DNA from: Gracilinanus agilis
Lineage: Eukaryota
Assembly (NCBI RefSeq): GCF_016433145.1
Contig: NC_058135.1
Location: forward strand, 279,931,875 to 279,995,874
Reading direction: 5' to 3'
Length of the DNA: 64,000 nucleotides
Shown: positions 13,498-61,870 of the stretch, in pieces
How the letters are laid out: every line of letters starts with the position of its first letter
Numbering within the stretch: the first letter of the stretch is position 1
The notes under the pieces: generated by a model
Seen by the model: the letters and a program-made list of their open reading frames with translations, nothing else
What the model was told of the DNA's origin: nothing
The model's database searches: none
Program-made: the position numbers and the translations under genes

Positions 13498-13843
13498 CTG
13501 GATCCTTTAGGGTGTAGACAAAACTCCAAGGGGAGTACTAACTGAGAACCTTCACCTTCGTAGGTCTCCAATTTAAAACCTTGATCCAAAGTCAAGAAAA
13601 AAAGAATTTATGGAAAGTGTTTCTGGCAATGGAAGATAAAAATTCAGTTTTCCAGGTCATGCTCTGTTGTCATCAGCCATCATTGTCCCTTAGATCTTGG
13701 TGACAGTAAGATCACCAAATAGCTAAGGGAAAGGAGATCTGTTTCTAATCAAAATAACAAATGAATAATGAAAACAATCAAATATGAGACTTGTCCAGTG
13801 GACATTGTTCCAAATTAAGAAATGAAGGCTTTCTGTGGCTTTT
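13498..13843 (-). other. Predicted non-coding first exon of G1 (intron 10532-13497)
   Basis: Donor CAG|GTAGGT at 13500-13492 is conserved in all four units. The acceptor is a pyrimidine tract plus CAG, with 29 nt between it and the ATG. Inferred; no transcript data. Confidence 0.55.
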
Positions 13844-14000
13844 GATCAGAAACTTCTAGTACTGTTTTACAAGAATTGAAATATTAGTGTTCTAAAGCAA
13901 AAGGGCTTCTTTCAGGACATCCAGAGTCATCCTGTGTGCACCTCTTAAAAGTACATAAGAGGATACCCAAGTCTCTGGGGATGCAATCATGATTAGTTAA
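13843..14000 (-). promoter_or_regulatory. Putative G1 promoter with a degenerate TATA (TGTAAAA)
   Basis: Homologous to the other three promoters. TGTAAAA at 13871-13865; the homeodomain position reads GATTAG. Confidence 0.45.
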
Positions 14001-14339
14001 GGAACTCATGGATGTATTCAGATATTGTTGTTAGGGCTTCTCTGTGGTACAGAGAGCATATGGCTGCTCTCAAAGGAGAAAAGAAATCAGGGCCATGAGT
14101 TCACTAGGTATAGAACTGATAGAGCCACCTCATGGACAAAAGGAAAACATGCAAGTGATGAGAAAAGTCCCTTGGGCCCCAAGCACATTGCCTTCTTAGA
14201 ATGCAGTTTTCATCTATTTGTCTTGTTGAATGAAAATAACAAGTGAGGTAGGGACAATGTATGCAAAGATTTGACTGACTAATAATTTTACAGAGTAATT
14301 AATGACAATGATGCAAGAAAGAAGAAAATAAATTAAATA

Positions 14340-14785
14340 GAGTGCAATTCTAATGGGTTGGCCATGCCATTCCAATGGCAAATACATGATTTCCTAAAAA
14401 GAGAATTTCACAGTGAATTCACATAAGGCAAGCACTCATTCAAAGCCTAGAAGAAGCAAAATAAGAACACTCTCCAGGTCTCTCAGAAGAATTTTAGTAT
14501 CTGCTGTGAGATATGGGAGGTGTCCAACATGGCAAGTCTACATCAAAGAACATGGTGTTTCATGAGCAAATCAGAATCACAGTAGTTAGTACAAAGGAAA
14601 CATGAGATGCACAAATCCAGAGACAGCTCCATTCCGCATGTTCAAACTGACTATTTGTGTCTGACCTGTGGCTCAGTCCCTACTGAGCTAATATGGAGTG
14701 GATTAGTCAGTCAAACACACTATGCCTTGATCCCAACCTCCTGATGTCATTGATCCTCTTCAAACAATAAATAACAAACAAAAGC
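14340..14785 (+). mobile_element. RTE 3' remnant, paralogous copy of the same insertion as 33170-36708
   Basis: Matches 36115-36708 and ends at the same junction (ccatagccatg...ctagaac) in psi1. Confidence 0.85.
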
Positions 14786-15435
14786 CATAGCCATGTAATG
14801 ACTAGAACATGGTTGAAAATAGAGGAAGATTCCTATTCCACAGAATACGAGGACTGATCTGAGATGGCTTGCTGGTGGCTTTCAGGAGGATAGGTTCTCA
14901 TGATGGTTTCAAAGATGATTAAGAGTACTTGTAAGACGATAAGAAGGGCAAAAAACTCATTGATTTACACAATATACTAAACCAGTTACCGAAGTATATC
15001 TCAGACCAGGGGAAAGTTGTGAGCGCAATAAAGTAACAGAAAAAGTTATATACCACTTTGGAACTACAGAAGAAAAAACCCCAAAAGATCATCTGTGTAT
15101 ATGGAGGAACTCATAAAGTCATAAACACAAAAAACAATGGCCAAATTAGGAAATCTGCTTAATGCCATGGTAGTGGTACAAAGGAGTATCTTATAATAAT
15201 AATATTATAATATAATAATAACATAATAAAAATTACATAAGATCATAGATGAGGAGAAAAATTTTAGAACTGAAAAAGAAAACAAGTAAAAAAAAAACAT
15301 GTCCATTGTAGGAAATCCATTGTAGCAAATGACTTGTTCTCCATGAAGAACCAAGTTATCAGTATTGCAGTAATGGCTAGAGTAGTTAAAATCCATAAAG
15401 AGATATTACTGAGCAAAAAGTGCATAAGTGTAAGG
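14786..15435 (-). pseudogene. OR5B-like pseudogene fragment psi1 (TM2 to ECL3), frameshifted
   Basis: Minus-strand translations TLMHFLLSNISL (~[12 protein letters not shown]), DFNYSS...VICYNG...MFFF (~DLGYSS...[14 protein letters not shown]) and SSSIYTDD (~SSSIHTGN). Truncated by an RTE 3' end at ~14785; the N-terminus is replaced by LTR-like and L2 sequence. Confidence 0.85.
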
Positions 15436-15619
15436 ATAGGGAAATCCCAGTATTTAAGGACTTTTGCTTGAATTGAATTCAAAAAGCATTAGTGAACTAG
15501 GACAAACTTTGGTACTTGAGTTCTTTCTTAATACATTAAGATTGGAGGGTGAGCAAATGCTTAGATTTTTCTGGATAGGTATAGATCCTTGCACCCTGCT
15601 TCTCACACTGTGAACCTGA

Positions 15620-17030
15620 ATAAAGCAAATAATTCATGATCCTACTCTATTTCTTTTCTCCCCATTCTCATACTAGGGGACTTCAACATACATATTGATA
15701 CTCCCTCAAGTATCCTAAATCTCACACTTCCTCAACTTCCTCATCTCCCATGACCTGTGCTTAACCTCAGATACAGACTGATTTATCCTTGATTTTGACA
15801 TCACCCACAAATGTTTCCACTTTTGTGTTTAAAATTATTGAAATCCCCTTATATAATTATGTTATTATAATAGATGGTAATATAGAAATAGATTGTGATG
15901 CCCTTCCCTCTTTTTTTGACTTGCATCCTCAAACCTTGTTCTTTATCAACATCATAATATCAGTTCCTTCATACTTTTTTTGTCTCCCAGGGTATCACTT
16001 CTCTACTAGCTACGATTTCGTTCTTTCCTTATAATAAGCCACTTCTGAACCAGTTCAGCTCTAGTCTGTCCTCTTCCCTGGAGGTGTTTAGCCACTTATT
16101 TTATATAAGTTCTTGGCTTACCAAGACTTATTCTTGGATCACTCCCATAATTCACTGCTTTTGATTTGATTTGATAAATGTTCATTTATTGCCAACTATA
16201 TCCATAGCACTATGCTGAGTGCCAAGGATATAAATAAGAAAAACAAAGATTGCTTCTGCCCCCAAGAAGTCTACCATTTAAACAAAGCTGAAGAAATACC
16301 TGGAGAAGAGGCATAATAATGATTATGGAATCAGTGGTATGATGATGGTGATGATTATGAAATCAAGACCAAGCTGAGCAGCTGGTGGTAGATGAGGCTG
16401 AGATTTAGTGCCATTAATAAAGGGACATTGGCAAAAGTCTGTATGCTTCTCACTGAAACCCTTAATTAGAAGGGCATAATGAACTGGGAGTTCTTATGAT
16501 TTGTCATTATCAAAATTGATCTCCATGATGATAAGTAACTGGTAATGATCTAATCCTGGAGAAAGGGGAAGGGCACGATGATGATAAAGTTGGAGGCAAA
16601 ACTAGGAAGAGCAGCTGGTAGACATTTGTTTGTTTTTTCCCATACATGTGCTACTGATGGAATCTGGACAGGAAAATAATAAAACAGTATCGACTAGGTG
16701 CACTATAAATCTAGATTTTATAACCAAAATCAAATTTCCATCCTTTTGTTTTCCTAATTACTTTAGTATTCTCACCACAACGGGTCTTCCAAATCTTTTC
16801 AGTCATCCTCCAATCTCTAATGACTCCCCATCCCCTCACTTGCTCACCTGAAAATATTTTATTGAAGAAATTAGAAGCCATTCACTGAAAGCTACATCTT
16901 CTACCTCATCTCAAATCACCCAGATGCCCTTTGCCATCATCTCTTCATTCCCTTTTGACTTACATGAGGGAAAGTCACCTCCCCCTGCCAAATCCCTCCA
17001 CATCACCACATTAACCCATTCTATCCTATC
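15620..17030. mobile_element. L2 fragments; paralogous tracts at ~37290-38300 and ~50290-50810
   Basis: Degenerate L2-like sequence (aaatgttcatttatt...cactatgctgagtg; ccattcactgaaagctac...cacccagatgcc). Confidence 0.6.
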
Positions 17031-17039
17031 TTATCTGGT

Positions 17040-18330
17040 TAAGAGTAAATAGTCCCTACTAGCAAAGTCCACAAATTAAAATATATGGGCAAAACATTCC
17101 TCTTAGGAGATGACTATATTCCTATTGTGAAGCCCAGTCACCACTTTGACAGTAAAAGCTGAAGGATAAATACAACTTACCACATGGAAAATGGGAGGCA
17201 TTTTAATTAGCTGCAGATTCTAAAATACCTAATGACATGAATACAGTCCTTTTGTCAACTCGTTTCAGTTGTACTCTAGTATTGTGACCTCTTTACTTCA
17301 CATTGTCTAGTGAGAGGCAATGACCTAAATGGAAATGCCTTAGGGATTTTCCTCCTGAGACCATGTAGCCCCATTAGTTTTTATGGAATTCTACATTTGA
17401 TATTTTTATCCCTTTCTTTGTCCAGGGAGTGAAATATCTACCCTTGGATGTCATAAAGAGTCAGGAGAATGAACTCCAGGAACACAATACTTGAAGTTCA
17501 CACCAAATTTTGTAGACATTTGAACACTAATGTTCTGAGGGGCAAAGAACAATCTCTAAAGTGATCTCCAGAAGTGTATCTCAAGAAGATATGAGAGGCA
17601 CAGATTCATCTCACAGTTCTCCATCTGGATGTGAACTTGATGAGATTATATTTATGAATTGACCTAAATTCTGAGCTTGTTCTCCCAAGAAACTGAAGTG
17701 GTACAGAGTGAGTTATGTCTCCAAGGTACTTGGGAACATATTCATGCATTTTTTCTTGTCATATCTTAGAATCAAATATTCCTTTGACAAATTTGATTAA
17801 TGATAAATAGAATTGGAGCACTAGTCATTGATTCATAACAAAGTTTCATGGTTATAATTTCATTCAAAATAATGGGTAATGTTATTTGGGGTGTAGAAGC
17901 TTTGAATTAATAAAATCCTCTGAGAAAAAAAGAATATGACCTGATATGTGGTGCAACTAGGCAGAAAAATTGGATTAATCTTTCTCATAGACAAGTAGTG
18001 TCCTGTCCAGAAAGGTGCCAAGAAAAAATAACAAAGGACCCTTGATGGATGGTTTCACTGCTGAATAGCTTCTATCCATGGTCATGAATACAAGTAAAGG
18101 ACAAATAGTATTACCACATATACTGCTCCATTTATAATAAAAAACACAATCTTAATGAGTTGTTTTAAATATTAAGGTGTTCATAATAATATGAGGCTTT
18201 CTATCATGCCACAGTGACTTTTTTCTAAAAAAAAAATACAGTAGAGGCCACTGAAAAGATGAAGTTCATTATTAAAAAGATTTTTAAAAGCCAAAAATAT
18301 AAAAAGAAACAATTGCAAATTAGTTAAACT
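17040..18330. repeat. Low-copy non-coding block D (paralogs 38300-39680, 51830-53870; divergent copy ~5950-6420)
   Basis: Colinear similarity visible by eye across the three main copies; not recognised as a transposon. Confidence 0.8.
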
Positions 18331-18513
18331 ATAGACATAAATCACAGAATAGGAAAGGAATAAGAAAAAATGGAAATAAAAAATGAAAACGTTTTATTTC
18401 TTGACTCAATGAACTTTCTCTGACTGTTCCCCATGCTCCAAATACATATTTTCCTTCTTCATTGTTTCCTATTAGCTTCCTTGAAATCCCAACTCAAATC
18501 CCATCTTCTATAG

Positions 18514-18677
18514 CAGGGGTCGGCAACGCTTTTGGCTGTGAGAGCCATAAACGCCACATTTTTTAAAATGTAATTTCGTGAGAGCCATACAGTGCTCACA
18601 GTGCCACTCCTGTAACAGTGCCTGAAAAAAATTACTTTATGGCTTCTGCAGAAAGAGCTATACGTTGCCAACCCCTG
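18514..18677. mobile_element. hAT-superfamily MITE
   Basis: 15-bp TIRs CAGGGGTYGGCAACG (1 mismatch), 8-bp TSD TTCTATAG/TTCTAGAG, repeated subterminal GAGCCATA motifs, and empty sites in paralogs (~40435, ~53990, ~54620). Confidence 0.92.
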
Positions 18678-19649: not shown

Positions 19650-19689
19650 TTTATTCGTTGATTGTAATACTATATGATATGAATTTATT
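19650..19689 (-). promoter_or_regulatory. Candidate poly(A) signals for G2 (AATAAA x2)
   Basis: Minus-strand AATAAA at 19689-19684 and 19655-19650. Homologous hexamers at 42863-42858 and 42826-42821 (G3), 57664-57659 and 57631-57626 (G4), and 7693-7688 (G1). The context is AT-rich and there is no clear GU-rich downstream element. Confidence 0.3.
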
Positions 19690-19939
19690 TATCAAAGATA
19701 ACTCTTTGAAAATAAAAAAATGCCAAACCCTAGCAATTTTGGTATTGTGCGAATCCAGGTGAACGAGGACTTTTATTTCCATGTTTAAAAATTTTAGACT
19801 TTGTGAAAGGCAGTGAAAGAATAATGTATTAAGTTCTTACTAGGTATCAGTCACTATGCAAAGTATGTGATTAGCTGTATGATCATGGAAAATTATTTAA
19901 ACTCTCAGTTCTCTCACACCATCTTCTAGAATATATGTG

Positions 19940-20709: not shown

Positions 20710-21639
20710 CTAGTGAAGGCTTTGTCTCCCCATGATTTTCCTAAAAGCATTGTTAACCTCCTTATTCCTCAGACTATAGACAAGAGGATTCAACATGGGG
20801 ATGACCATGGTGTAGAACACTGAAGCCACTTTGGCTGTGTCCATGGAATGGCTAGAGATAGGTTGTAAGTACATGAAGATCACTGTTCCATAAAATATGG
20901 ATACAGCTGTGAGATGGGAAGCACAGGTAGAGAATGCTTTCTGGCGGCCCTCAGCTGAACGCATCCTCAAAATGGCAATGAAAATGAAAAAATAGGATTT
21001 CATGATGAAAAAAAGGGCAAAAAATACATTGAATCCTACAGCAAAGAAGACAACTAATTCATTGATGTATGTGATAGAACGAGAGAGAACTAAAAGGGGT
21101 GGAATATCACAGAAAAAGTGATGAATCATGTTGGAATTACAGAAGTCAAGGCTAAAGGTGTTTCCTGTGTGAAGGGAGGAAAAAAGAATACCAAGGATAG
21201 AGGTTCCAATCACCAGACAGACACATACACTGGACGTCATTGTCCTGGTATAATGGAGGGGTTTACACACAGCTACCTGGCGATCATAGGCCATAGCAGC
21301 CAGGAGGTAACTTTCAACAGTGGCAAAATACACAAAGAAGAACATTTGTGTGGCACACCCACTATAGGAGATGGTTTTGTCCTCTAGGAGGAATCCAGCC
21401 ATCACTTTAGGAGTGATGGTGGAAGAGTAGCCCATATCTGACAGAGAGAGGTTACTGAGGAAAAAGTACATTGGTGTGTGAAGACGAGAGTCCCACAATA
21501 TTAGGACTATCATGCCCAGGTTCCCCACCAGGGTGATGAGGTAGATGATAGTGAATATTATGAAGAGGGGGACCTGAAGCTCAGGGGCATCTGTTAATCC
21601 AGCAAGGATGAACTCCTTCACCTCTGAACAGTTCTCCAT
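20710..21639 (-). CDS. Olfactory receptor, OR5B-like (G2), 309 aa
   Basis: Complete ORF with all OR signature motifs; closest paralog of G1. Confidence 0.96.
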
Positions 21640-22252
21640 AAATGCTTGTAGTTATTTGGGCGATTCCCCTGGAAAAGAGAATAACAATAAGAATTAATTA
21701 TAAAAATTATCATGCTTCTCTGAGACTGATAGAATCATATTTCATAAAATATAAAAGTGAAAAATGTTTGCATAAAAATTGGGTTTTTTGATGCATGATA
21801 AATTAATATCATTTTAATGTTGCAGGATTTTTCAGCAGGCAACATAAGGTCTCCTATTCCTTAAGATAAATATTGAACAGGTTCAACCTTCATAGTTCCC
21901 ATGACCTTTGTCTTTACTATTCATCAGCCACATATATTGTGGCCATGATATTGATTTGATTATGTCTTCAACTCAATGACTCAGAACTCAGAACTGTCTT
22001 TTTTGAACATAGCCTTCTGTCTTTCCTTAAAATGTTCTGCCTCACTCTCTCTGACTAGATTTACTCCAACCCATGAACACCATTTCCTACATCCCAATCA
22101 TTTTGCCAAGTTCATCTCCCCTGGATTGGTCTCATTCTTTCCCCATATTGACCCTATGATTATTATTGCTTCAACTCTACACCATTACCTACACTAAAAT
22201 TCCTTACTCATTTGTCCTTTCACCAGTCACTCCAAAAAAAATTATACTCTTC

Positions 22253-26166: not shown

Positions 26167-26510
26167 ACACTTGTCTTCTGTAGGATCTGTGACAAGTCAC
26201 TAAATATCTCAATCTCAGTTTCTTCATCTCTAAAATAGCATTTGCCATCTTAAAGCTGTCATGAGGATCAATGAGATCTGAAAAATGTTCAATGTTATGA
26301 GAACACTGAAGTGCTAAATAAATGCTATCATTCTTTTCTATCCAAATGTAATAACATAAAATATTATGAAAATGGCAATTCTGTATCTGTGATTATGAAC
26401 CCTCTACCTCCTCATACCTTGAAGAGAAGAATACAATTTTGCTTTCACATAACACACATATTACAGAACTCAGTGAAATTGTCATTAGTCATCTAATATA
26501 TGATACCTAC

Positions 26511-26830
26511 CTGGATCCTTTAAGATGATGACAAGAATACAAGTAACTTCACCTAAGGATATCTTCAATTAGAACCTCAATGTAAAGAGAAGAGGATTTG
26601 TAGAAACTCTCCTCGGTGCTAAAAACCTAGAATACTCCAGGGTATTATCTATTTTCTTCAGTCGCTGTTGTTCCTTAGATCTTGGTCACAATACTATTAC
26701 AAGATATGCTAAAGCAACAGAAAACTGCTCCTGTTTTAATTAATACATAAATGATGACAACAGCTAAATGTCAAACTTGTCCAATGGACATTTATCCAAA
26801 TTAAGACTTAAAGGACTTTCTGTATCTTTT
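26511..26830 (-). other. Predicted non-coding first exon of G2 (intron 21669-26510)
   Basis: Donor CAG|GTAGGT; acceptor ttctcttttcCAG, 29 nt before the ATG; TATAAAA 28 nt upstream of a TCA initiator. Confidence 0.6.
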
Positions 26831-26990
26831 GATCATAAACCTGTAGTAGATTTTTATAAAAGAGGGGATGCTGATGCTCTTAAGGGACAAAGATTACTCT
26901 GAGGATATCTAAAGTTACTTAGCACTCACCTCTGAAAAGCACATAATAGCATACCCAGGTCTGTAGGGAACCAATCACAATTATTACTAA
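26830..26990 (-). promoter_or_regulatory. Putative G2 promoter
   Basis: TATAAAA at 26858-26852; TAATTG (minus strand) at 26983-26978. Confidence 0.55.
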
Positions 26991-27519
26991 GGAAGTCATG
27001 GATGTAGTTGGATGTTTTTGTCAAGGCATCTCCATGGTACACAGAAAATATGGCTGCTCTCAGAAGAGACAAGAAAGTAGGGGCCATAAGCTCACTAAGT
27101 ATAGACCTGATGGAGCTACCTCAAAGACAGCAGGAAAACAGGAAAGGAAGATGATAAGTCCCTTTGACCCCAGGCTTAATGCCTTCTAATAATGCAGCTT
27201 CCATTCATTTGTCTCTCAATAAAAATGCCTGATGAGGGAATGGGAGGTATGCAGAGATTTAGTAGATTAATGACGGTGATGTAAGAAAGACGAAATAAAA
27301 GAGAACCAATGAATCATTCAAAAAAACATACAGAAAATAGTAGAAGGTATTTCAACATGGGACAAAGACAAGTAGTGCAATTTTACTATTGATTAAATAT
27401 AATAAACATTTAAAAATTCTATGTAATGAAAATTAATAGCTTCATGTGTTATTTTCTTCTATTATTTGTGTATTGAAATGATTGCTTGTTCATGCTTACT
27501 TTTGCTCTTGTACAGTCAT

Positions 27520-30900: not shown

Positions 30901-32266
30901 TATTTTTGGGATAAGATGTTTCATATTCTCTTCTATTATTTCATTCTTTTGATTTGCTTTATTCTTTCTTATTGTCTAAGAAAATCATCAGCTTCTCCTT
31001 GTCCAATTCTAGTTCTTAATAAATTATTTTCTTCCATGAGTTTCTAGATCTCTTTTTCCTTTCAAGTGATATTTCTTTCATAATCTTGATTTTTTTCATT
31101 GCTCTATTTCTTATTTTTTTGCTAATTTTTCTTCAACTTCTTTCATTTGTTTTTTGAGAGCTTTTTTCTTTTTAAGCTGTTCCAAAAGCTCTTTTTTTTG
31201 AACGTGTGGTCATGTATTGTATTTCTTTGCTGCTTTTGAAGTAGATATTTTTATTTTACTGACCTCTTAGTTTTAACTGAGATCTTTTCTGTCCCCACAA
31301 TAGCTATTAATAGCTGAGTTCTTTCTCCTTTGCTCTCATTTTTTTATTTTAGGGACCAAGCCAATAGACTTATAATTATTGTTTTTATGGAGTTCCATTA
31401 TCCTAGGATGCTGGGGTATGTTACAGGTTTCAGGATTTTTTGTGTTTATTTTTTTTCCTGTGCCCTATTTGGTTATTCAGATTTTTATAATCTACAGTAT
31501 GATGTAATCCCAATTCTCTTGCTTAAACTTCAGTCCATGATTGGTCTCAAGTTCCCCAACCAGAACCTTCAGGCAGTTCTGCCACTGCAAGTGCAAGTAG
31601 ACAGCTCATTTACCCCTATAGCAGCAACAAGGGATTCCACTCTCCTTAAGAGTGACAACAGCTTACAGAGTCCCAATTCCTCAGTAACTACACTTACTGG
31701 TGTACATTCATTCCTCACTCCTTTTCTTCTGCTGTCACAGTCCTGGATAGAATATGTTTCCAGTCTAGGTTCCTCAGGCATTCAAAGTCCCTTGATTTTT
31801 AGCAGCAAGCCAGAGTTCCCACTCCAGGGCCTGGAGCATTTACAGTCTATTGTGTCCACTCCTTCCATCCCAGCTATGGGCCAGATGGAGTCTTTGGAGC
31901 CAAGGCTATACTTGACATGGTTATTCCCAGGACCCTCCACTTAATGATTCAAGTGCTATCCTCTGGGATGCAAGCTCAGCTGTTCACCACACAAAAGAAG
32001 GTTGCCAGTTCTTCACCCAGGGTCTGCCTTGTTGATTCCACTCTGCTTGTTTCACTCCCATGGTCTATAGCAGTGAGACTGAGGCCATGGAAGTCAGATA
32101 CCTTCCTCCCTTGTTGACCTTGACTATTCAGCTCCATTCCCAACTTCTGACTGGTTTTGCCTCTTTTAGCACTGATTCTTTGGATTACTTTTATTGTTTG
32201 TAGGAGGTATGAGAAGGGTGAGGAAGCTTCGTGCCCTATTCTACCATTTTCCCTCAATACCATACG
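27988..32266 (-). mobile_element. Old L1 with 5'UTR, ORF1 and 3' end but most of ORF2 missing; contains nested fragments
   Basis: L1 ORF2 C-terminal, ORF1 and 5'UTR-like sequence on the minus strand. TSD AGGTGARTTTATTCT at 27973-27987 and 32267-32281; empty site in unit 3 near 49445-49460. Confidence 0.8.
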
Positions 32267-40313: not shown

Positions 40314-40314
40314 C

Positions 40315-41540: not shown

Positions 41541-41554
41541 ATTATAAGGGAAGA

Positions 41555-43776: not shown

Positions 43777-44706
43777 CTACTGAAGTCTTTTTCGCTGCAT
43801 GATTTTCTTAAAAGCACTGCTGACATCCTTATTCCTCAGACTATAAACCAGAGGATTCAACATGGGAATGACCATGGTATAGAACACTGAAGTCACTTTG
43901 TCTGTGTCAATGGAATGGCTAGAGCTGGGTTGTAAGTACATGAAGGTTATTGTTCCATAAAATATAGATACAGCTGTGAGATGGGAAGCACAAGTAGAAA
44001 ATGCTTTCTGGCGGCCCTCAGCTGAAGGCATCCTCAAAATGGCAATGAAAATGGAAAAATAGGATTTCATGATGAAAAAAAGAGAAAAAGCTGCAACAAA
44101 ACTAACACCAAAGAAGAGAACCAATTCATGGACATATGAAAGAGAGCAGGAGACAGCAAAGAGGGGAGGGACATCACAGAAAAAGTGATGGATCACATTA
44201 GAATTACAACAGTAGAGGCTGAAGGTGTTTGCTGTGTGAAGGGATGAACAAAGAAAACCAAAGATGTAGGATCCAATAACTAGACAGACACACACACTGG
44301 GTGTCATGGTGGTGGTGTAATGGAGGGGCTTACTCACAGCTACCTGACGATCATAGGCCATAGCAGCCAAGAGATAACTTTCAACAGTGGCAAAGTGCAC
44401 AAAGAAAAACATTTGTGCAGCACACCCACTATAGGAGATGATTTTGTCCCCTGGGAGGAATCCAGCTATCACTTTAGGAGTAATGGTGGAAGAATAGCCA
44501 AGATCAGTCAGAGAGAGGTTACTGAGGAAAAAGTACATGGGTGTGTGGAGATGGGAGTCCCACAATATCAGGACTATCATGCCTAGGTTCCCCACCAGGG
44601 TGATGAGGTAGATGATGGTGAATATTATGAAGAGGGGGATCTGAAGCTCGGGGGCATCTGTTAATCCTACCAGGATGAATTCCTTCACTTCGGAACAATT
44701 CTCCAT
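43777..44706 (-). CDS. Olfactory receptor, OR5B-like (G3), 309 aa
   Basis: Complete ORF with OR motifs. True start is MENCS at 44704-44706; the TTG-started extension in the ORF track is intronic/UTR. Confidence 0.95.
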
Positions 44707-46480
44707 AAATGCCTGTAGTGATTTGAGTGATTCCCCTGGGAAAGAGAACAACAATCAACAGCATAAAACATGGGAATTATCTTTCCTTCATGAGAGTGAC
44801 AGAATCATGTCTAATATAATATTATGCTACAAAATTCTGCAACATTAAAGTTGGTTTTTTTTCTAAGATCATACTAATGTTGAAGTTGAAGTTTTTCAGC
44901 ACACATCATGACATGCCCTATACTCATTAAGATCATTACTGAATAGTTCCTAAACCTCCTCAGCATCATTGACCTCCATTTTGATTATGTATAAGCCACA
45001 TATATTATGGTCACAGTATCTTTTAATTATATATTCTACCTCACTCCTCTTCTGCCTACATTTACTGCTTCCAGCAGATTCCAATCTCTACAATTCCTTT
45101 ATATCTATCATTTTTAAGTTCATTTCCCTGCCTCACTCTTTCCCCTTCACAAGACTGACAAAATGACTACTGATTCAACCATATTCCATCATCTATCCTA
45201 GAATTCCTTATTCTTTAGTCCTTTCACCAGTCAATCCAATCCAGCATTATGCTCATAACATACTTATAACTGTCTCACAAAAGTAGACAAGGTCCATAAC
45301 TATGTTGAAAGGTTTCTCTACTTTAAAAATGTTGTTACCTTGTCACTTGCAACCTCCATGAGCCAAACAAATTTAGTTATTTTTCCCCAATTAACTTTCT
45401 ATCACATTTTCCAATACCACATAATTTTTCTTGCAGCAGCAGAGGAAGAACTATTACTCCTGAATTCTCTTTCCATTTTCCATACTCCAATTCCCATTTT
45501 GTTATTTCCTGTGACCTCCTACTTCGTCCCTATTGCAGAGAAAGAGGTAGATCTTCTCACTGCCAAGCTTAATCAATATATATGTGCTCTTCAACTGGCC
45601 ACATTGAACCTCCTCTAAAAATATTAATAGATAGGTTTTATATAATATTATTGGGTTTTGACTATAATTTATTAATATTACCACATGTTATCCTCACAAG
45701 AACCTGGAATATAAATATTATACACATTTTACAAAGGAGAAAAAAGGAGACAAAGAGAAGAGACTTGCCAAGAGTCACATAGTGAGCACCTGAGGCTCAG
45801 TGTACTGATTCCAGAAAACATACTCCCTGATACCTGCAAAAATCCACCCCCTCAGTCATTCCTCTATTGTGTTTTCTTCTGCTTAGACACTTTCTCATTA
45901 CCAATTATTTAAAATAATGCCCACAGTCTATAATCATTTTTGAAAATCATCAATTTGAAAATGCATTCTCTACCTAATTACAGTTTGGTATTGCTGAAGC
46001 ATAGATATTCTTTATCTGTCTGGTGCTCTGTGCTCTTCAGGGGAACTCTACTTTTTCTGAGATAAAACATAAATTTCATTGTTTCACATTTAAAACCCTT
46101 CACCACTTCTCTCCATTGTACCTTCCTAGATTGATTTCATACCTTTCTCTCTCTTGTGAGCCATATATGCCAGGCAGACAGATCCACATCCATTTCTCCT
46201 TCCATGATCTCACATTTCCCACTAATGAGCCTTCCTATAAACTGCTTTTCATTCCTCTGAAGTTCAATCTCTTCAATAGTTACTCTTAAAATCCCTTGTT
46301 CCCTGAAATGTTCATCTCAAATGCCAACTCATACTCAGAATATTTCCTGTTCCTCTCATAGTTTCTGCCCAATATTAAAAGTTTACATCTCTTTGGTATA
46401 TATTTTCCATTGATTTATGCATGTAAATGGGATTTTCTACAAGAAGGATATAAAATAATTGAAGGTGAAATACTTGTGCT

Positions 46481-47732: not shown

Positions 47733-48071
47733 CTGGGTCCTTTAAGGTGATGATAAGACTCAAGGGGGAAGGACTAAGTACTTTCACATAAGAATAAGTC
47801 TTTAATTAGAAACTTCATCCAAAGGCCAGCAGATTTGTGGGAAGTCTTCTCGGTGTCTGGGGCTAAAAACTGAGAATGATCCAGGTAAACGTCTGATGTC
47901 CTCAGTCACTGTTGTTCTTGGATCTTGGTGAGAGTAAGACCGCCAGATGAACTAAGGCATGCAAACACTGTTTTTTGATCTAATTGATACATGAATAATG
48001 ACAACCAAAAATAAAGTTTGTCCAGTGGACATTAGTCCAAATTAAGACAAAAAGGACTTTCTGTACCTTTT
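47733..48071 (-). other. Predicted non-coding first exon of G3 (intron 44736-47732)
   Basis: Donor CAG|GTAGAT; acceptor ttctctttccCAG, 29 nt before the ATG; same TATA-initiator spacing. Confidence 0.6.
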
Positions 48072-48235
48072 GGTCACAAACTTGTAGTCGATTTTTATAA
48101 AAAGGGGAATGTTGGTGCTCTTAGGGGACAAGTTACTCTGAGGACATCCACAGTTACTTTGCATGCACCTCTGAAAAACACATAATATCATACCCAGGTC
48201 TGTGGGGACTCATCATAATAATTACTAAGGGAAAT
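48071..48235 (-). promoter_or_regulatory. Putative G3 promoter
   Basis: TATAAAA at 48099-48093; TAATTA at 48219-48224, followed by a GGGA half-site. Confidence 0.55.
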
Positions 48236-48538
48236 CATGAGTGTATTCAGATGTTTTTGCCAGGGTAGCTCCATGGTACACAGAGAATATGGCTGCTCTC
48301 AGAAGACACAAGAAAGTAGGGCCATGAATTCACTAGTATAGGCATCATGGAGCAACATCATAGACAACAAGAAATTAGGCAGGGAATGTGGTAAGTCCCT
48401 TTGGTATCAAGTATAGTGACTTCTAATGATGCAGCTTCCAAGTATTTGCTTCCTTGAAGAAAAATGTCTGATGGGGCAAGGGTGTGGTATGCAGAGATTT
48501 GGTAGATTAATAACAGTGATACAAGAATGAAGAAATAA

Positions 48539-50089: not shown

Positions 50090-50285
50090 CCTAATAATGG
50101 CTTTTGCCTCTAGAAATTCTAATGGAAGTATTCTTAATATCTTTATTCCAGAAGCTATAGATGAAAGGACTCAACATCGGAAGGGCAATGAGGGAGAACA
50201 CTGATACCACTTTCTCTATAGTCATAGAATGGCTTCAGCATTGGATGATGACAACTTCTTGAGAATGCTGTGAAAATGATTAAAC
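50090..50285 (-). pseudogene. OR pseudogene remnant psi3 (TM7 and C-terminus only)
   Basis: Minus strand reads SHSMTIEKVVSVFSLIALPMLSPFIYSFWNKDIKNTSIRISRGKSHY*. It lies at the cassette position homologous to psi2 and carries no RTE. Confidence 0.8.
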
Positions 50286-51764: not shown

Positions 51765-52769
51765 CCTGTGAATGTAAATCCCTCTGTACACACTTTCCTG
51801 TACACACTTTCAAATGCCATCCTATATTCTCTGAGTAGGAGGAAACAGTCCACATTAGCAAATATATCAAATTAAAATATACAAATAACCCATCCCTTAA
51901 GGGAAATGATCATATTCCTAGTGTGAAGCCCAGTCATCAGTTTGAGAGCAACACCTAAAATGTAAATACAGTTCACCACATGGAAAAGGAGATGATCTCC
52001 TGAAGAGACATTCAAGAGTACCTAGCAACCTATGCCTGGCCTTTGAACAAGTCTTATTTCAATTGAACTCTAATATTGTGACCCCTTACCTCACCTTGTC
52101 TGGTGAAAGTCACTAACCTATATGGAAAGGCCTCAGAAATTTTCCCCTTTTGAGGCCATGTAGTCCCAAGAAAGATACCTTCTATGGAATTCTATATTTG
52201 AATTTTTTATCCCTTTATTTTTCCAGGGAGTGAAGTGTTTGACCATGGAAGTTTCAAAAGGTCAGGAGAGTGAGTTATAGGAACCCAAGTACTTGAAGAT
52301 CATTCCAAATTTTGTAGTCAATTGAGTACTAATATTCTGAGGGACAAGGAACCACCTCTAAGAGTGACCTCCAGGAGTACATCTCAAGAGGAGATGAGAA
52401 GCAAAAATCCATTACATAGTTCATCACACAAACTGGTCATGAACTTGATGGGACCAATGATATGTAGGAACTGAGATAAATTGGGAGCCTGATCTCCCAA
52501 GAGACTGAGGAGGTACAGAGTGGATTATGCCACCAAAGTACTTGGGAATATGTTTACACATTCTTTTCTTTTCTTTTCTTAGGAGCAAATATCCTTTTCT
52601 AATAGTTATTCAATGTCAAAAGGAAATGAGGCACTTGTCACTGGCTCATAACAAGATTTAAATGTTATAGTCTCATTCATAACTAATAGGTAATCTTACA
52701 GGTTGATTTGTGAGATACAAACTTTGAATTGATAAAAATTGACAAAAAAATTGTTTGTTTGTTTGTTTG

Positions 52770-53316: not shown

Positions 53317-53740
53317 GTGTGTGTGTGTGTGTGTATGTATATATNNNNNNNNNNNNNNNNNNNNNNNNNNNNNNNNNNNNNNNNNNNNNNNNNNNNNNNN
53401 NNNNNNNNNNNNNNNNNNNNNNNNNNNNNNNNNNNNNNNNNNNNNNNNNNNNNNNNNNNNNNNNNNNNNNNNNNNNNNNNNNNNNNNNNNNNNNNNNNNN
53501 NNNNNNNNNNNNNNNNNNNNNNNNNNNNNNNNNNNNNNNNNNNNNNNNNNNNNNNNNNNNNNNNNNNNNNNNNNNNNNNNNNNNNNNNNNNNNNNNNNNN
53601 NNNNNNNNNNNNNNNNNNNNNNNNNNNNNNNNNNNNNNNNNNNNNNNNNNNNNNNNNNNNNNNNNNNNNNNNNNNNNNNNNNNNNNNNNNNNNNNNNNNN
53701 NNNNNNNNNNNNNNNNNNNNNNNNNNNNNNNNNNNNNNNN

Positions 53741-53788: not shown

Positions 53789-53794
<6 letters not shown>

Positions 53795-56376: not shown

Positions 56377-58548
56377 GACCATAATTGAATAGAAAGAGAA
56401 CTGAGCTAACTCCAGAATTGAGTCACAAATTGGAGTCAGTGTGGTTCACTCAATTCCCACAATCAATGACTTACTGTCCTAAGTTCCACAATTCCTTCAT
56501 TTGTTTAAAAAACTTCTGGGAAAACTAGATAGTATTCTGACAGCAATTGGGTTTAGACCAATACATTACACTATATTCTATAATACATTATAAGTGAAAA
56601 GTTAGCCTTAAAGAACATTATATAACATACATAAAAAAATATTAGATCATATACTTCTTACAGCTAGGAGTAAGAGATGTATTCTAAAGCATATAAGGAA
56701 TAGGAGATAATTAAAAAGATAAAATCAATTGCTTTGATTTAAATATAACTGAAAATCTTCTACACAGATAAAAATAAAACACCTAAAATAAGAAGGAAAT
56801 AAGTAGAATGGGGAAAAAATATTTGTGTCAAATTGTACTGATAGGAGATTGATGTCTAAGATTATATTATTTATTTGTGTATTCATTTGGATGTGTATAT
56901 ATATATATATATATGTAATTACATATGTATGGATAAGGAGATAGAAATATATAAATATATTTGATGACAATTCCCAAAAATAAGAAAAATATAAAACTAA
57001 ACAAATCTGAGGCTTCAGCTTCCACCATACAAATGACAAAGATAATTAAAAAATGTCAATAATCAATTATGGAGAGACTGTGGGGTGATAGACACACTAA
57101 TACTTTGTGAGTAGAGCTGTGAAATAGTACCATAATCTTGGAAAGTAAAATGAAATTCTGCTAATAAAGTGAATAAAATTCCCATATGCTTTGAATCAGA
57201 GACTCATCTCTAGGCTTATGACCCAAGGTAGGCACTAATGAGAAGGAAGTCCCCATATTCAAGAAAATAGGTAGAACAATGATTCTGAAAATAGTAAAAA
57301 TTGGCTGCCCATCAAAAGGGGAATGACTAAAAGAACTGATGCAATGGAATATTGATGTGCTATAAGAAATGCTGTATCTGATGAATACAGAATACAATGG
57401 TGAGGGGTTAGGAGGAAATGACTTTAGAATAGATATTAGGAAAATGTTTCTAAGCCATTACTGCTGTACAAAACTAAAATGTATACTTTCAAAAGACAGT
57501 GGCTTAAACCCCTTTGTAGGTCTTTAAACAGAAACTGGATTTCTTCCTGAGAACGTGGAATGGAGACTTTTTTGTTATAAGGTAGGTAATAGGATTACTG
57601 AGGTCTCTTCCAACTCTCAAATTCTTTTATTCATTGATTCTAATTCTAATGATGTGAATTTATTTATTAATGATAACATAGAAGAGGAAACATCACAAAG
57701 AAAAAACAAACCTCAGTAATTTTTTATATGCAGGCCAATCCATATAAATTAGGCACTTTTCTCCCTCTATATAAAAGGCTTAGAATTCAAAAAAAATAAT
57801 GTACAAAAGGCTGGCCTACAATTAAGTCAGTCAAATCAGTGAACAAAATGTCCTGAGTACTTACTATGTGCCAATCTCTTGCAAGGTCCTGTCTGTGACT
57901 GCTTGTGTGAACAAATATAATTAATTTAAACTCTAAGATCTCCCAACAAACTCTTCAAGAATATATGTTGAGCAAAGGTTGCCAGTCCACAGCAGAACAG
58001 GGAGTTATCACACTGGGAGAAATATACATCACTTCTCTCCCACTTGACAACTCTTGTCAAGTTCAAAAGAATGGGGACAATAATGGCTGATTTTCTACTA
58101 GTCTTTTTAGCAAAACTTTGAGATCAGTAATGCAGTGGTGATGACCCATCTCTTCAACTCACTCAACCATAGTCTGCCCAGAATCACATGATGAGTAAAT
58201 ATGGCAGACCCATAAGGGCTGATGTGCACAACAAATCATAATTTTCTGTGATATAGGAATTCTTTGAAAGTTCCTATGAAAAAATGAAGAGACAAAAAAT
58301 TTAAAAGTCCCATTAACTGAGAGATGAAGTCAAGAAACATTCAGAATACACAAATTTTTAGAAATTATAGATCATGAAATCAGACACAGGAAGATAGTTA
58401 GGAAAGATATTATAAAATGTAAGAGAAAGAGAGAATTTATTGCATATAATCTATGAAAATAAAGTGTGTGAACCCAGAAGATGTTGTATATTAAAGAAAA
58501 TAGAAGACAAATACTTGAGTACTTTACTCCTTAATTAAAAGGAGATGC

Positions 58549-59478
58549 CTAGCTAAGATTTTGTCTTCCCATGATTTTCCTAAAAGCATTGCTGACTTCT
58601 TTATTTCTTAGACTATAGACAAGAGGATTCAACATGGGGATGACCATGGTGTAGAATACTGAAGCCACTTTGTCTGAGTCCATGGAATGGCTAGAGCTAG
58701 GTTGTAAGTACATGAAGATTATTGTTCCATAAAATATAGATACAGCTGTGAGATGAGAAGCACAAGTAGAAAATGCTTTCTGGCGACCCTCAGCTGAACG
58801 CATCCTCAAAATGGCAATGAAAATGGAAAAATAGGATTTCACGATGAAAAAAAGGGTAAGAGAAGCATTGAAACTAACACCAAAGAAGAGAACCAATTCA
58901 TGGACATATGTAAGAGAGCAGGAGAGAACAAAGAGGGGAGGGACATCACAGAAAAAGTGATGGATCACATTGGAATTACAAAAGTGAAGGCTGAAAGTGT
59001 TTGCTGTGTGAAGGGACGAACAAACAAAACCAAAAATATAGCATCCAATAACTAGACGGACACACACACTGGGTGTCATGGTGGTGGTGTAATGGAGGGG
59101 CTTACACACAGCTACCTGACGATCATAGGCCATAACAGCCAGAAGATAACTTTCAATAGTGACAAAGTGCACAAAGAAGAACATTTGTGCAGCACATTCA
59201 CTATAGGAGATGGTTTTGTCCCCTGGGAGGAATCCAGCTATCACTTTAGGAGTAATGGCAGAAGAATAGCCAAGATCAGTCAGAGACAGGTTACTGAGGA
59301 AAAAGTACATGGGTGTGTGGAGACGGGGGTCCCACAATATCAGGATTATCATACCCACATTCCCCACCAGGGTGATGAGGTAGATGATAGTGAATATTAT
59401 GAAGAGGGGGACCTGAAGCTCAGGGGCATCTGTCAATCCCACAAGGATGAACTCCTTCACCTCTGAGCCATTCTCCAT
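58549..59478 (-). CDS. Olfactory receptor, OR5B-like (G4), 309 aa
   Basis: Complete ORF starting MENGS at 59476-59478. It is the only one of the four with all canonical cysteines (C95, C125, C167, C177, C187) and no extra ECL2 cysteine. Confidence 0.95.
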
Positions 59479-59924
59479 AAATACTTGTAGTGATTTGGGT
59501 AATTCCCTTGGGAAAGAGAAAAACAATCATCAGAATAGTCATGAGCAATTATCTTTGTCTTATGAGAGTGATAGAATCATATATTATGTAAGATTATACT
59601 ACAAAATTCTGTTATATGAAAATTGGGTTTTTACAAGGTCATGCAAATGTTGTAGTTGTAATGTTTCAGCACACATCATAACTAGTGCCCCATACTGATT
59701 AAGATCATTCCTAAACACTTTCCTGAAATTCTACAGCACCTTTGACCTCCATTTTTACTTTGTATAAGCCACAAATATTGTAATCATACTCTTGATATAT
59801 TACTGAAAATCATGAATTTCTTCTTTTGAGCATAGTCTTCTATCTTTAAATTATGTATTTTCTATATAAATAGGGTTTTCTACAAGTATGATATAAAATC
59901 ACTGAAGATGCAAATATGTGTGTG

Positions 59925-59955
<31 letters not shown>

Positions 59956-60088
59956 CACGTGCATATCGGGGAGGAGATTCTCAGAGATTAGCACAATGTT
60001 TGGAATATAGTAAAAAATAAATACTTGTTGAATTAATTGCATGACTAGAATTGAACACATATGATCAAGAATTTCTCCATAAAGTCTT

Positions 60089-60248
60089 TTTTTTAAACCC
60101 TTACCTTCCATCTTGGAGTCAATATTGGCTCCAAGGCAGAAGAGTGGTAAGGGCTAGGCAATAGGTGACTTGCCCAGGGTCACACAGCTAGGAAGTGTCT
60201 GAGGTCAGATTTGAACCTAGGACCTCCCATCTCTAGGCCTAGCTCTCA
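60089..60248 (-). mobile_element. 5'-truncated SINE1 in the G4 intron
   Basis: TSD TCCATAAAGTCTT at 60076-60088 and 60249-60261. Confidence 0.9.
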
Positions 60249-61325
60249 TCCATAAAGTCTTAAACATTTGTTCACTTAAATTTTAGGTCATCTATTCCAT
60301 CCCTTCGTGTATAGGTGATTTGCCCAAAGTCTACATAACTAAGCCAGGATTTGAACAATCATACTCTGGTTGCAAATATTTACCCCTTTAAGGAACCCTG
60401 GATTGGAGAAAAGATTATAGTTAACAGTGCTGGGTACTAGTCCTTTGATTACCACTAATTTACTCTGAACTTTAGGCAGGTCACCTCCCCAACATATGTC
60501 TCCATTACAATACCTATGGGATGAGGGAATAAAGACTAGGTGGCTTTTTTGCATCCAAAATGTACACTGTTACCTATGCAATTATAACACTTTAAGACAT
60601 TTTCTACTAAGATGAAAATATGACTAATAAAAACTGGAAGAGATTTTTAATATTCAGAGTTCACAGTTCCTTATGTAGAGCTTTGAAATCAATGGGAGAA
60701 CAAATGATTAGTATTTGAAATAATGGCAATTGATGGTATGACAAGACTGATTTATTTAGGGGGTGAAGGTTTACATTTGAATTTCATTTCTGCCATTTTC
60801 TACATATCTTTTCTCAGTCAAGACCCATTAGCATCTGAGTCTCACTTTCTTCAGTTATAAAAGTGGATTATCCATCAGGTGTTTTCCCATTCAAACTTAA
60901 GATCTATGAGGGACATAAGTGGCATAGAAGATAGAGTGAAGGATGTAGAATCAGGAAGAACTGACTTCAAACTCTAAGAAATTTGCTCTCTGTATGAACC
61001 TCAACAAGTCACATAATATCTCTCAGCCTCAGTTTCTTCATCTCTAAAATAGCATCTGCCATCACAAGGCTATCATGAGTATCAACTGAAATTTTATAAA
61101 CGAAAAGTGTTTTAAGAACCTTTAAGTACTAAATAAATGTTAGCTAGCATTCTTAATTATCTGAATAGATTAACATGAAACATTATGAAAATGGCAGTTC
61201 CAAATCTCTAACTTTAAACCCTTTATCTCCCCATACCTCGAAGACGAAGATTTATTTTTTCTTTCACATAGTACACATATTAAAGAACTGAGGGAATCTG
61301 TCACACTCTAATATCTGATGCCTAC

Positions 61326-61708
61326 CTGGGTCCTTTAAGATGATGACAAGATTTCAGGTGGAAGGAGTAAGTAGCTTCACCTAAAGATAAGTCTTCAATA
61401 ATAAAAATGATTCAATATAATTCAATAAAATGCAAAATAATTCAATAAAAAAATAATGCAAAAACAACAGGATTTGTAGGAAGTCTTCTTGGTGTCTGGT
61501 GCTATAAATTGAGAATTTTCCAGGTCATGATCTGCTGTCCTCTGTAGCTGTTGTTCTTTGATTTTGGTGACAGTAAGATCCCAGATGAGCAAAGACAAGG
61601 GAAATTTTATTTTAATCTAATTAATACATGAATAATGACAACCAAATATCAAAATTGCCCAATGGATATTGGTCCAAATTGAGACATAAAGGACTTTATG
61701 TAGCTTTT
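61326..61708 (-). other. Predicted non-coding first exon of G4 (intron ~59507-61325)
   Basis: Donor CAG|GTAGGC; the acceptor CAG is changed to CAA with a new AG 1 nt downstream; same TATA-initiator spacing. Confidence 0.55.
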
Positions 61709-61870
61709 GATCATAAACTTGTGGTAGATTTTTATAAAAGGGGGAATGTTGGTGCTCTTATGGGACAAAAGTTACTCTGAGGACTTCCAAAGTTATTTTG
61801 CATGCACCTCTGAAAAGCACATAATAGCATATCCAGGTCTGTGGGGACTCATCATAATAATTACTAAGGG
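61708..61870 (-). promoter_or_regulatory. Putative G4 promoter
   Basis: TATAAAA at 61736-61730; TAATTA at 61858-61863. Confidence 0.55.

What the first reader, a model, noticed from the sequence alone, without database searches (positions are those of the whole stretch)
13498..61870. Four-way paralog comparison reveals a complete hidden gene architecture: TATA promoter, non-coding exon, fixed splice sites
Seen, minus strand, in flanks that are otherwise only roughly 70-85% alike by eye. (1) TATAAAA lies exactly 28 nt from a pyrimidine-CA initiator in G2 (26858 to 26830), G3 (48099 to 48071) and G4 (61736 to 61708), with the same spacing in G1. (2) A homeodomain hexamer sits ~150 nt upstream (TAATTG in G2, TAATTA in G3 and G4). 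(3) A CAG|GTAG donor lies 320-380 nt downstream in all four. (4) A pyrimidine tract plus CAG lies exactly 29 nt before the ATG in G1-G3. Established: mouse OR promoters use homeodomain (Lhx2/Emx2-type TAATTR) and O/E (EBF) sites and have 5' non-coding exons. Inference: this is the real two-exon transcript and core promoter, with a canonical TATA box, of an opossum OR subfamily.
Basis: partly seen in the sequence, partly recalled or inferred. Interest (0 to 1): 0.75.

Follow-up and report, generated by a model that had tools for sequence, protein, structure and literature searches.

The report
Predicted promoters of four smell-receptor genes
Four neighbouring marsupial smell-receptor genes share a likely promoter, a short non-coding first exon and an intron ahead of the coding exon, which is the ordinary layout of such genes in mouse and is backed here by sequence conservation but not by any RNA data.

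Summary
The window holds four tandem minus-strand class II (OR5-like) olfactory receptor genes of 309 aa.

The "exact" spacings carry no independent weight. The whole units are duplicates, and this stretch has no indels.

Measured against a neutral baseline (4-fold sites 0.52 and intron 0.53 steps per site), exon 1, the acceptor flank and the 29-nt leader evolve neutrally. The roughly 260 nt just upstream of the predicted start is the most conserved non-coding stretch of the unit. In G2-G4 it changes as slowly as the coding sequence (0.19 vs 0.33 neutral; permutation P=0.0002), and the block ends 4 nt before the predicted start.

The donor is the best conserved donor. A second conserved donor lies about 90 nt downstream and scores higher in G3. 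The acceptor ranks first of 241-374 AGs in G1-G3.

No conserved O/E site lies in the promoter. No RNA run was available, so starts and junctions remain predictions.

This is a new member of a known kind. The scan noted similar TATA-bearing OR promoter cassettes elsewhere in this genome.

The parts
9573..10502 (-). G1 coding sequence (309 aa plus stop), olfactory receptor
   Evidence: Pfam 7tm_4, E 7.9e-51. The ATG at 10502 is aligned with the other three genes.
20710..21639 (-). G2 coding sequence (309 aa plus stop)
   Evidence: 7tm_4, E 6.9e-50. The closest solved chain is consensus OR5, 9wpm_A, E 1.5e-126.
43777..44706 (-). G3 coding sequence (309 aa plus stop)
   Evidence: 7tm_4, E 7.3e-47; coordinates.
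58549..59478 (-). G4 coding sequence (309 aa plus stop)
   Evidence: 7tm_4, E 1.6e-49; coordinates.
26870..27129 (-). G2 conserved proximal promoter block (-300 to -40). It includes TAATTG at 26983-26978.
   Evidence: This is the lowest substitution rate of any non-coding 250-column window. The 3-way rate is 0.189 vs 0.332 neutral, P=1.3e-5.
48111..48366 (-). G3 conserved proximal promoter block. It includes TAATTA at 48224-48219.
61748..62006 (-). G4 conserved proximal promoter block. It includes TAATTA at 61863-61858.
13883..14138 (-). G1 counterpart of the promoter block. It has TAATCA at 13995 and evolves at the neutral rate or faster on the G1 branch.
   Evidence: G1-specific changes are 0.159 per site here vs 0.133 in the intron; site.
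26852..26858 (-). G2 TATAAAA. The predicted start is at about 26830-26827.
48093..48099 (-). G3 TATAAAA. The predicted start is at about 48071-48068.
61730..61736 (-). G4 TATAAAA. The predicted start is at about 61708-61705.
13865..13871 (-). G1 TGTAAAA at the aligned TATA position. It is not a canonical TATA box.
13498..13843 (-). G1 predicted non-coding exon 1 (346 nt), donor CAG|GTAGGT
   Evidence: Exon 1 evolves neutrally.
26511..26830 (-). G2 predicted non-coding exon 1 (320 nt), donor CAG|GTAGGT
47733..48071 (-). G3 predicted non-coding exon 1 (339 nt), weak donor CAG|GTAGAT. The alternative donor, with last exon base 47647, scores higher.
61326..61708 (-). G4 predicted non-coding exon 1 (383 nt, with a 45-nt insertion), donor CAG|GTAGGC
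10503..10531 (-). G1 5' leader of exon 2 (29 nt), after the acceptor TTCTCCCAG|
   Evidence: The acceptor ranks 1 of 242 AGs, with a 45-nt AG-free zone upstream.
21640..21668 (-). G2 5' leader of exon 2 (29 nt), after the acceptor TTTTCCAG|
   Evidence: rank 1 of 374 AGs
44707..44735 (-). G3 5' leader of exon 2 (29 nt), after the acceptor TTTCCCAG|
   Evidence: rank 1 of 241 AGs
59479..59506 (-). G4 5' leader of exon 2 (28 nt), after the shifted acceptor CCCAAG|
   Evidence: rank 3 of 125 AGs
19684..19689 (-). G2 shared AATAAA, 1021 nt after the stop codon. The counterparts are G1 7688-7693, G3 42858-42863 and G4 57659-57664.
53345..53740 (.). Assembly gap in the G3-G4 intergenic spacer. It is not part of any gene model.

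Best explanation
Each of the four OR5-like genes is most likely a two-exon transcription unit. A proximal promoter of about 300 nt drives initiation about 28-31 nt downstream of a TATAAAA box in G2-G4. G1 has lost the canonical box. A 320-383 nt non-coding exon 1 is spliced from a CAG|GTAG donor, across a 1.8-4.8 kb intron, to a strong acceptor 28-29 nt before the ATG. Exon 2 carries the whole coding sequence and about 0.9-1.0 kb of 3' UTR (1.9 kb in G1), ending at a shared AATAAA.

Shown:
- the motifs and their coordinates;
- the homology of the units;
- constraint on the block upstream of the predicted start in G2-G4;
- neutral evolution of exon 1 and of the acceptor flank and leader, and the rank of the splice sites.

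Inferred:
- that the conserved block is the promoter;
- that TATA positions the start;
- that these particular splice sites are used;
- that homeodomain factors bind the TAATTR site.
For: - The neutral baseline is consistent: 4-fold sites 0.520 and well-aligned intron 0.534 steps per site.
- The block -300 to -40 has 96 steps vs 134 expected (P=3e-4). It is the minimum of 2244 non-coding 250-column windows.
- In G2-G4 the rate in this block is 0.189, against 0.174 in the coding sequence and 0.332 neutral (P=1.3e-5).
- With look-elsewhere correction, the most conserved 250 columns in G2-G4 are -258 to -4 (P=0.0002). In the 4-way alignment they are -300 to -42 (P=0.017).
- The five best non-overlapping 30-column windows all lie in the promoter, at the start or at the donor.
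- Gap columns make up 3.5% of the block, against 24% in exon 1.
- The TATA is the only sense-strand TATAAA shared by three or more paralogs.
- The donor is the best conserved donor. Only 2-3 of 122-292 GT sites score as high or higher in G1, G2 and G4.
- The acceptor ranks first in G1-G3, and all four genes have a 45-46 nt AG-free zone upstream of it.
- GC content rises to 0.45 at -300 to -200 and dips to 0.29 at 0 to +100 in all four genes. Mouse OR starts show the same rise and dip (PMC3247239).
- The start-to-ATG distances of 2.2-5.2 kb fit the mouse mean of 4.2 kb (PMC3247239).
Against: - There is no transcript evidence. The run search found only one holder, which is not on record as RNA.
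- The core promoter -40 to +10 is not significantly conserved (P=0.27 in the 4-way alignment, 0.06 in the 3-way).
- G1 lacks the TATA box and the TAATTR site, yet its coding sequence is constrained (0.047 vs 0.133 neutral).
- No O/E site with one mismatch or fewer lies in the G2-G4 promoters.
- A second conserved donor lies about 90 nt downstream and scores higher than the proposed one in G3.
- Only four related sequences were available, so power is low and gene conversion cannot be excluded.
Confidence: 0.62

Rival explanations
1. The shared motifs are only inherited neutral sequence of a tandem duplication. The real first exon and promoter lie elsewhere: further upstream, in another part of the 'intron', or directly in front of the coding exon.
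For: - All four units are homologous from about -480 to beyond the 3' UTR.
- Exon 1, the acceptor flank and the leader evolve neutrally.
- A shared MIR-like core in the intron is also among the top conserved 30-column windows. Short conserved patches therefore arise without function.
- There are no RNA data.
Against: - The block abutting the predicted start is the single most conserved non-coding stretch, even with look-elsewhere correction.
- The only shared TATAAA sits at the 3' edge of that block.
- The best conserved donor follows 320-383 nt later.
- The strong acceptor and its AG-free zone argue against an unspliced transcript that starts at the coding exon.
Confidence: 0.17
2. The low divergence of the -300 to -4 block among G2-G4 reflects gene conversion or a mosaic duplication history, not purifying selection on a promoter.
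For: - The trees are discordant. The coding sequence and its 4-fold sites put G1 with G2 (0.892 and 0.772). Introns and promoter put G2 with G3 and G4. Sequence exchange therefore happens in this cluster.
- The G1 and G2 terminal branches show little or no reduction in the block.
Against: - All three pairs among G2-G4 are more alike in the block than in the introns, by 0.07 to 0.11 in identity. No single pair has become near-identical.
- G1 pairs are also slightly more alike in the block, by about 0.04.
- Indels are depleted in the block.
- The tract would have to coincide with the TATA-proximal region by chance.
Confidence: 0.1
3. The model is right in outline, but the donor about 90 nt downstream (last exon base 13403, 26418, 47647, 61237) is the one used, or is used as an alternative. 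This is most likely in G3, whose proposed donor is GTAGAT.
For: AAG|GTAKGR is conserved in all four genes with a minimum score of 7.1. In G3 it scores 8.6, against 6.4 for the proposed donor. Mouse OR genes commonly have isoforms whose exons differ in length through variant splice sites (PMC4154679).
Against: The proposed donor scores higher in G1, G2 and G4. Its window is among the most conserved: 3rd of the 30-column windows. The scoring matrix is approximate.
Confidence: 0.2
4. The promoter plus exon 1 derives from a co-opted transposable element. A retroviral LTR and leader, for example, also carry a TATA box followed by a splice donor a few hundred nt downstream.
For: Only the general resemblance of a TATA box followed 320-383 nt later by a donor. 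No repeat library was available.
Against: The block matches nothing else in the 64 kb window except the three paralogous promoters. No LTR boundaries or primer-binding site were seen by eye.
Confidence: 0.05

Closest known systems
Mouse class II odorant receptor gene structure and proximal promoter (Young 2011, PMC3247239; Ibarra-Soria 2014, PMC4154679; reviews PMC5318403 and PMC12547500)
   Same: - A single coding exon preceded by a non-coding 5' exon and an intron of a few kb.
- An AT-rich promoter with a GC rise and dip at the start.
- Conservation rising towards the start.
- A homeodomain TAATTR site within 200 nt of the start.
- A TATA box 28-31 nt upstream of the predicted start, inside the -60 to -10 window where a subset of mouse OR promoters have one.
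- A predicted transcript of about 2.2-2.4 kb, against a mouse median of about 2.5 kb.
   Different: - No O/E (EBF) site with one mismatch or fewer in the G2-G4 promoters.
- The start sites are predicted, not mapped.
- The species is a marsupial, and no olfactory RNA data were found for it.
OR promoter cassettes noted by this scan in other windows of the same genome (s1-181971, s1-170993)
   Same: Tandem OR paralogs share a conserved proximal promoter module, with a TATAAA, several kb upstream of the coding exon.
   Different: The cassette AGGGAWNATGYCCC of s1-181971 is absent from these promoters at three mismatches or fewer. This subfamily therefore has its own promoter sequence. No orthologs from other species could be fetched here.
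Consensus OR5 receptor (PDB 9wpm_A)
   Same: The G2 protein aligns over residues 2-306 with E 1.5e-126. It is class II and OR5-like.
   Different: This is a protein-level relation only. It says nothing about the promoter.

Membership tests
Olfactory receptor (Pfam 7tm_4), class II, OR5-like | Full-length 7tm_4 match in an uninterrupted ORF of about 310 aa | tested here: met
   All four ORFs match 7tm_4 with E 7e-47 to 8e-51. Each is 309 aa with no internal stop. G2 is closest to consensus OR5, and the class I consensus chains score far lower.
Mouse-type OR gene with a non-coding 5' exon | Functional-looking splice acceptor shortly upstream of the ATG | tested here: met
   The acceptor ranks 1 of 242, 1 of 374 and 1 of 241 AGs in G1-G3 and 3 of 125 in G4. 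It has a 45-46 nt AG-free zone and a YTRAT branch-point candidate at about -21. The scoring matrix is approximate.
Mouse-type OR gene with a non-coding 5' exon | Spliced transcript joining an upstream exon to the coding exon | not testable with these tools
   No RNA run was found.
Mouse-type OR proximal promoter | Homeodomain (TAATTR) site within a few hundred nt upstream of the start | tested here: met
   TAATTG or TAATTA lies at -153 to -155 in G2-G4 and is the only TAATTR in -500 to +50. G1 has TAATCA. Its presence alone is weak evidence, because 10% of 60-nt windows hold one.
Mouse-type OR proximal promoter | O/E (EBF) site TCCCNNGGGA near the start | tested here: not met
   At one mismatch or fewer there is none in -500 to +50 of G2-G4. 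G1 has two one-mismatch sites, at 13972 and 14168. The aligned G2-G4 sequence TCCCYACAGA has two mismatches.
Mouse-type OR proximal promoter | Conservation rises, repeats and indels drop, and GC rises then dips approaching the start | tested here: met
TATA-box core promoter | TATAWAW about 25-35 nt upstream of a mapped start | tested here: inconclusive
   TATAAAA is present in G2-G4 and replaced by TGTAAAA in G1. The start is not mapped. The core -40 to +10 is not significantly conserved.
Promoter cassette of s1-181971 (AGGGAWNATGYCCC followed by TATAAA) | The cassette 29-34 nt upstream of TATAAA | tested here: not met
   There is no match at three mismatches or fewer in any of the four promoters, and no enrichment in the window: 40 matches vs 47 expected.

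The most novel reading that the evidence does not exclude
G1 is a natural promoter-turnover experiment. Its coding sequence is still under purifying selection. On its own branch, however, the 300-nt promoter block has drifted at the neutral rate or faster and has lost both the TATA box (now TGTAAAA) and the TAATTR site. G1 would then either be chosen at a different frequency or in a different zone than its three paralogs, or start from another, unrecognised promoter. Comparing G1 with G2-G4 in olfactory RNA would show directly what the TATA and homeodomain sites contribute to OR choice in a marsupial.
Probability: 0.25. Interest if true: 0.45.

Novelty: new member of a known kind. Interest (0 to 1): 0.25.

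Why it matters
If confirmed, the model gives usable start sites, UTRs and promoter coordinates for an OR5-like subfamily in a marsupial. OR annotation in such genomes is usually limited to the coding exon. It would also show that the mouse-type layout (proximal promoter with a homeodomain site, optional TATA box, non-coding first exon) holds in this lineage too. It does not change any concept. Its practical value lies in annotation, probe design and comparative study of OR promoters. The contrast between G1 and G2-G4 is a small natural test of how much the TATA box and the homeodomain site matter.

Tried and rejected
- RNA evidence failed at every step. The look-up of sequencing runs returned one holder that is not on record as RNA (X1, 0.72 of the words, about 1x of the genome).
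- O/E scan: there was no enrichment at one mismatch or fewer (21 vs 18.6 expected) and no site in the G2-G4 promoters.
- The cassette of s1-181971 was not found here. A findings search by sequence was blank, which means nothing.
- The upstream spacer block with O/E-like sites (38965 and 39010, and its paralogs) evolves at about the neutral rate, 0.416 in a 3-way alignment. It was therefore rejected as a conserved enhancer.
- The composite Lhx2/Ebf motif could not be scanned, because the paper text gives no consensus letters.
- The big protein searches were not used, because Pfam and PDB already identify the proteins.
Exon 1 and the leader were joined only inside a local script, to count upstream ATGs.
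- The gaps were not filled.

Full report
**What is in the window.** Four ORFs on the minus strand match the olfactory receptor family 7tm_4, with E between 7e-47 and 8e-51. Starting from the aligned ATG, each encodes 309 aa:
- G1: 10502..9573
- G2: 21639..20710
- G3: 44706..43777
- G4: 59478..58549

They are 82-88% identical in protein. G2 is closest to the solved consensus OR5 receptor (9wpm_A, E 1.5e-126), well ahead of the class I consensus receptors. This is therefore a class II, OR5-like subfamily. Other notes of this scan call the genome agile gracile opossum (s1-192260); I did not check that.

**The assembly gap.** The gap at 53345-53740 lies in the G3-G4 spacer. It is 5.2 kb upstream of G3's TATA and 4.8 kb downstream of G4's stop codon. 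Its flanks match the paralogous G2-G3 spacer in the same order and orientation and at a similar distance. No feature or alignment used here crosses it, and reading frame is not at issue. It was not filled.

**The observation.**
- TATAAAA lies at 26858, 48099 and 61736, with a CA 28 nt downstream.
- TAATTG lies at 26983, and TAATTA at 48224 and 61863.
- The CCAG|GTAG donor has its last exon base at 13498, 26511, 47733 and 61326.
- YYYCAG| ends at 10532, 21669 and 44736, so exon 2 starts 29 nt before the ATG.

There are four exceptions:
- G1 has TGTAAAA (13871-13865) at the TATA position.
- G1 has TAATCA (13995) at the homeodomain position.
- G4's acceptor is CCCAAG|G, 28 nt before the ATG.
- G3's donor is the weak GTAGAT.

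**Why the "exact" spacings carry no weight.** A self-BLAST shows that the whole duplication units are homologous at 68-82%. The homology runs from about 480 nt upstream of the predicted start through exon 1, large parts of the intron, the coding sequence and the 3' flank. There is no indel between TATA and CA. The repeated spacing is one inherited event, not four observations.

**Are the elements more conserved than neutral sequence?** I aligned the four units and counted parsimony steps per column.
- Baseline: 4-fold degenerate sites give 0.520 steps per site and well-aligned intron gives 0.534. The intron is therefore a fair neutral standard.
- Exon 1 (0.556), the 40 nt before the acceptor (0.611) and the 29-nt leader (0.552) are all neutral.
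- The core -40 to +10 (0.460) is not significantly low.
- The donor window -10 to +8 is nominally low (4 steps vs 10.1 expected, P=0.027).
- The block -300 to -40 is clearly low (96 steps vs 134 expected, P=3e-4). It is the minimum of all 2244 non-coding 250-column windows.
- The five best non-overlapping 30-column windows are -235 to -206, -127 to -98, the donor, -275 to -244, and -12 to +19.

**G1 accounts for most of the noise**. Its own branch changes at 0.159 per site in the block and 0.20 in the core, against 0.133 in the intron. Its coding sequence changes at only 0.047.

Among G2-G4 alone:
- The block evolves at 0.189, the same as the coding sequence (0.174), against 0.332 neutral (P=1.3e-5).
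- After permuting columns to allow for look-elsewhere, the most conserved 250 columns run from -258 to -4 (P=0.0002). The 4-way figure is P=0.017.

The constrained block thus ends right at the predicted start. Gap columns make up 3.5% of the block, against 24% in exon 1.

**Other positional support.**
- The TATAAAA is the only sense-strand TATAAA shared by three or more paralogs anywhere in the units.
A second conserved donor, AAG|GTAKGR, lies about 90 nt downstream (last exon base 13403, 26418, 47647, 61237). In G3 it scores higher than the proposed donor.
- With an approximate acceptor matrix, the proposed acceptor ranks 1 of 242, 1 of 374, 1 of 241 and 3 of 125 AGs. It has a 45-46 nt AG-free zone upstream.
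- GC content rises to 0.45 at -300 to -200 and dips to 0.29 just after the start in all four genes.
- A shared AATAAA lies 885-1021 nt after the stop codon in G2-G4 and 1880 nt after it in G1. This gives predicted mRNAs of about 2.2-2.4 kb for G2-G4.

**What is missing.**
- No O/E (EBF) site TCCCNNGGGA with one mismatch or fewer lies in -500 to +50 of G2-G4.
- No RNA evidence could be obtained. The run search returned one holder that is not on record as RNA.

**Comparison with what is known.**
- In mouse, 866 of 913 reconstructed OR models have 5' exons, and the median model is about 2.5 kb (PMC4154679).
- The 314 mouse OR starts studied lie on average 4.2 kb from the ATG. Repeats drop and conservation rises towards the start, and GC content rises and dips there. 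TATA-like sites lie at -60 to -10 in 39% of promoters, yet are not more conserved than their surroundings. O/E and homeodomain sites are enriched (PMC3247239).
- Reviews describe OR promoters as AT-rich, some with a TATA box (PMC5318403, PMC12547500).
- The present model, with starts 2.2-5.2 kb from the ATG, fits this picture in every tested respect except the missing O/E site.
- The scan has already reported conserved TATA-bearing OR promoter cassettes in other windows of this genome (s1-181971, s1-170993). The cassette of s1-181971 is not present here.

**Verdict.**
Its "exactness" is inherited.
The promoter location is supported by a significant conservation peak that abuts the predicted start, and the acceptor is strong.
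- The donor has a conserved competitor. The TATA box is dispensable at least in G1.
- Gene conversion remains a minor rival, because coding and non-coding trees disagree.
- This is a new member of a known kind and of modest interest.

Noticed in passing
44732-44741, 59504-59513, 21665-21674: Perfect O/E (EBF) palindromes TCCCNNGGGA sit exactly on the predicted splice acceptors of G3 and G4. With flanks they read TTCCCAGGGGAAT and TTCCCAAGGGAAT. G2 has one mismatch and G1 two. The window holds 5 perfect sites vs 0.9 expected (0 of 100 shuffles reach 5), but only three are independent by descent, and two lie in coding sequence (44447, 59219). This may be coincidence between the acceptor consensus and GGAAT, or an intragenic EBF site.
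   Followed up: partly
13865-14138: On G1's own branch the promoter block changes at the neutral rate or faster (0.159-0.20 vs 0.133 per site). TATA has become TGTA and TAATTR has become TAATCA, while G1's coding sequence stays constrained (0.047). This agrees with note s1-154177.
   Followed up: partly
50100-50234 (-) and 14774-14872 (-): Short relics of OR coding sequence (aa 263-307 and 240-272 of G2; tblastn E 7e-7 and 5e-5) lie 2 kb upstream of G3's predicted start and 0.9 kb upstream of G1's. They are remains of older OR copies in the spacers.
   Followed up: no
G2 about 26207-26236, with aligned places in G1, G3 and G4: A MIR-like core (ATTTTAGAGATGARGAAACTG) is shared by all four introns about 300 nt after the donor. 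It ranks among the most conserved 30-column windows. Short 'conserved' patches therefore occur in presumably neutral repeats.
   Followed up: no
whole units, 9000-62200: The trees disagree. The coding sequence and its 4-fold sites group G1 with G2 (0.892 and 0.772 identity). Introns and promoter group G2 with G3 and G4 (0.75-0.77, vs 0.69-0.73 to G1). This suggests gene conversion in the coding exon or a mosaic duplication history.
   Followed up: partly
7688-7693, 19684-19689, 42858-42863, 57659-57664: A shared AATAAA is followed by a SINE-like sequence. It lies 0.9-1.0 kb after the stop codon in G2-G4 and 1.9 kb after it in G1, which carries about 0.9 kb of extra sequence in the 3' UTR. G1 and G2 have no AATAAA or ATTAAA in the first 880-930 nt after the stop codon.
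   Followed up: partly
38965-39019, 52495-52504, about 17660-17750: O/E-like sites lie in a spacer block that is repeated upstream of G1, G2 and G3. The block as a whole evolves at about the neutral rate (0.416 steps per site in a 3-way alignment), so there is no sign of a conserved enhancer.
   Followed up: yes
61400-61450 (G4 exon 1): A 45-nt AT-rich insertion (TTGAATTAT-type short repeats) is present only in G4's predicted exon 1. This fits the lack of constraint on that exon.
   Followed up: no
31330-31944 (+): A 204-aa ORF with a TTG start and no Pfam match lies in the G2-G3 spacer, near the RTE element noted in s1-153946. It is probably repeat-derived.
   Followed up: no
4297-4459: A second assembly gap (163 N) lies outside the finding.
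   Followed up: no
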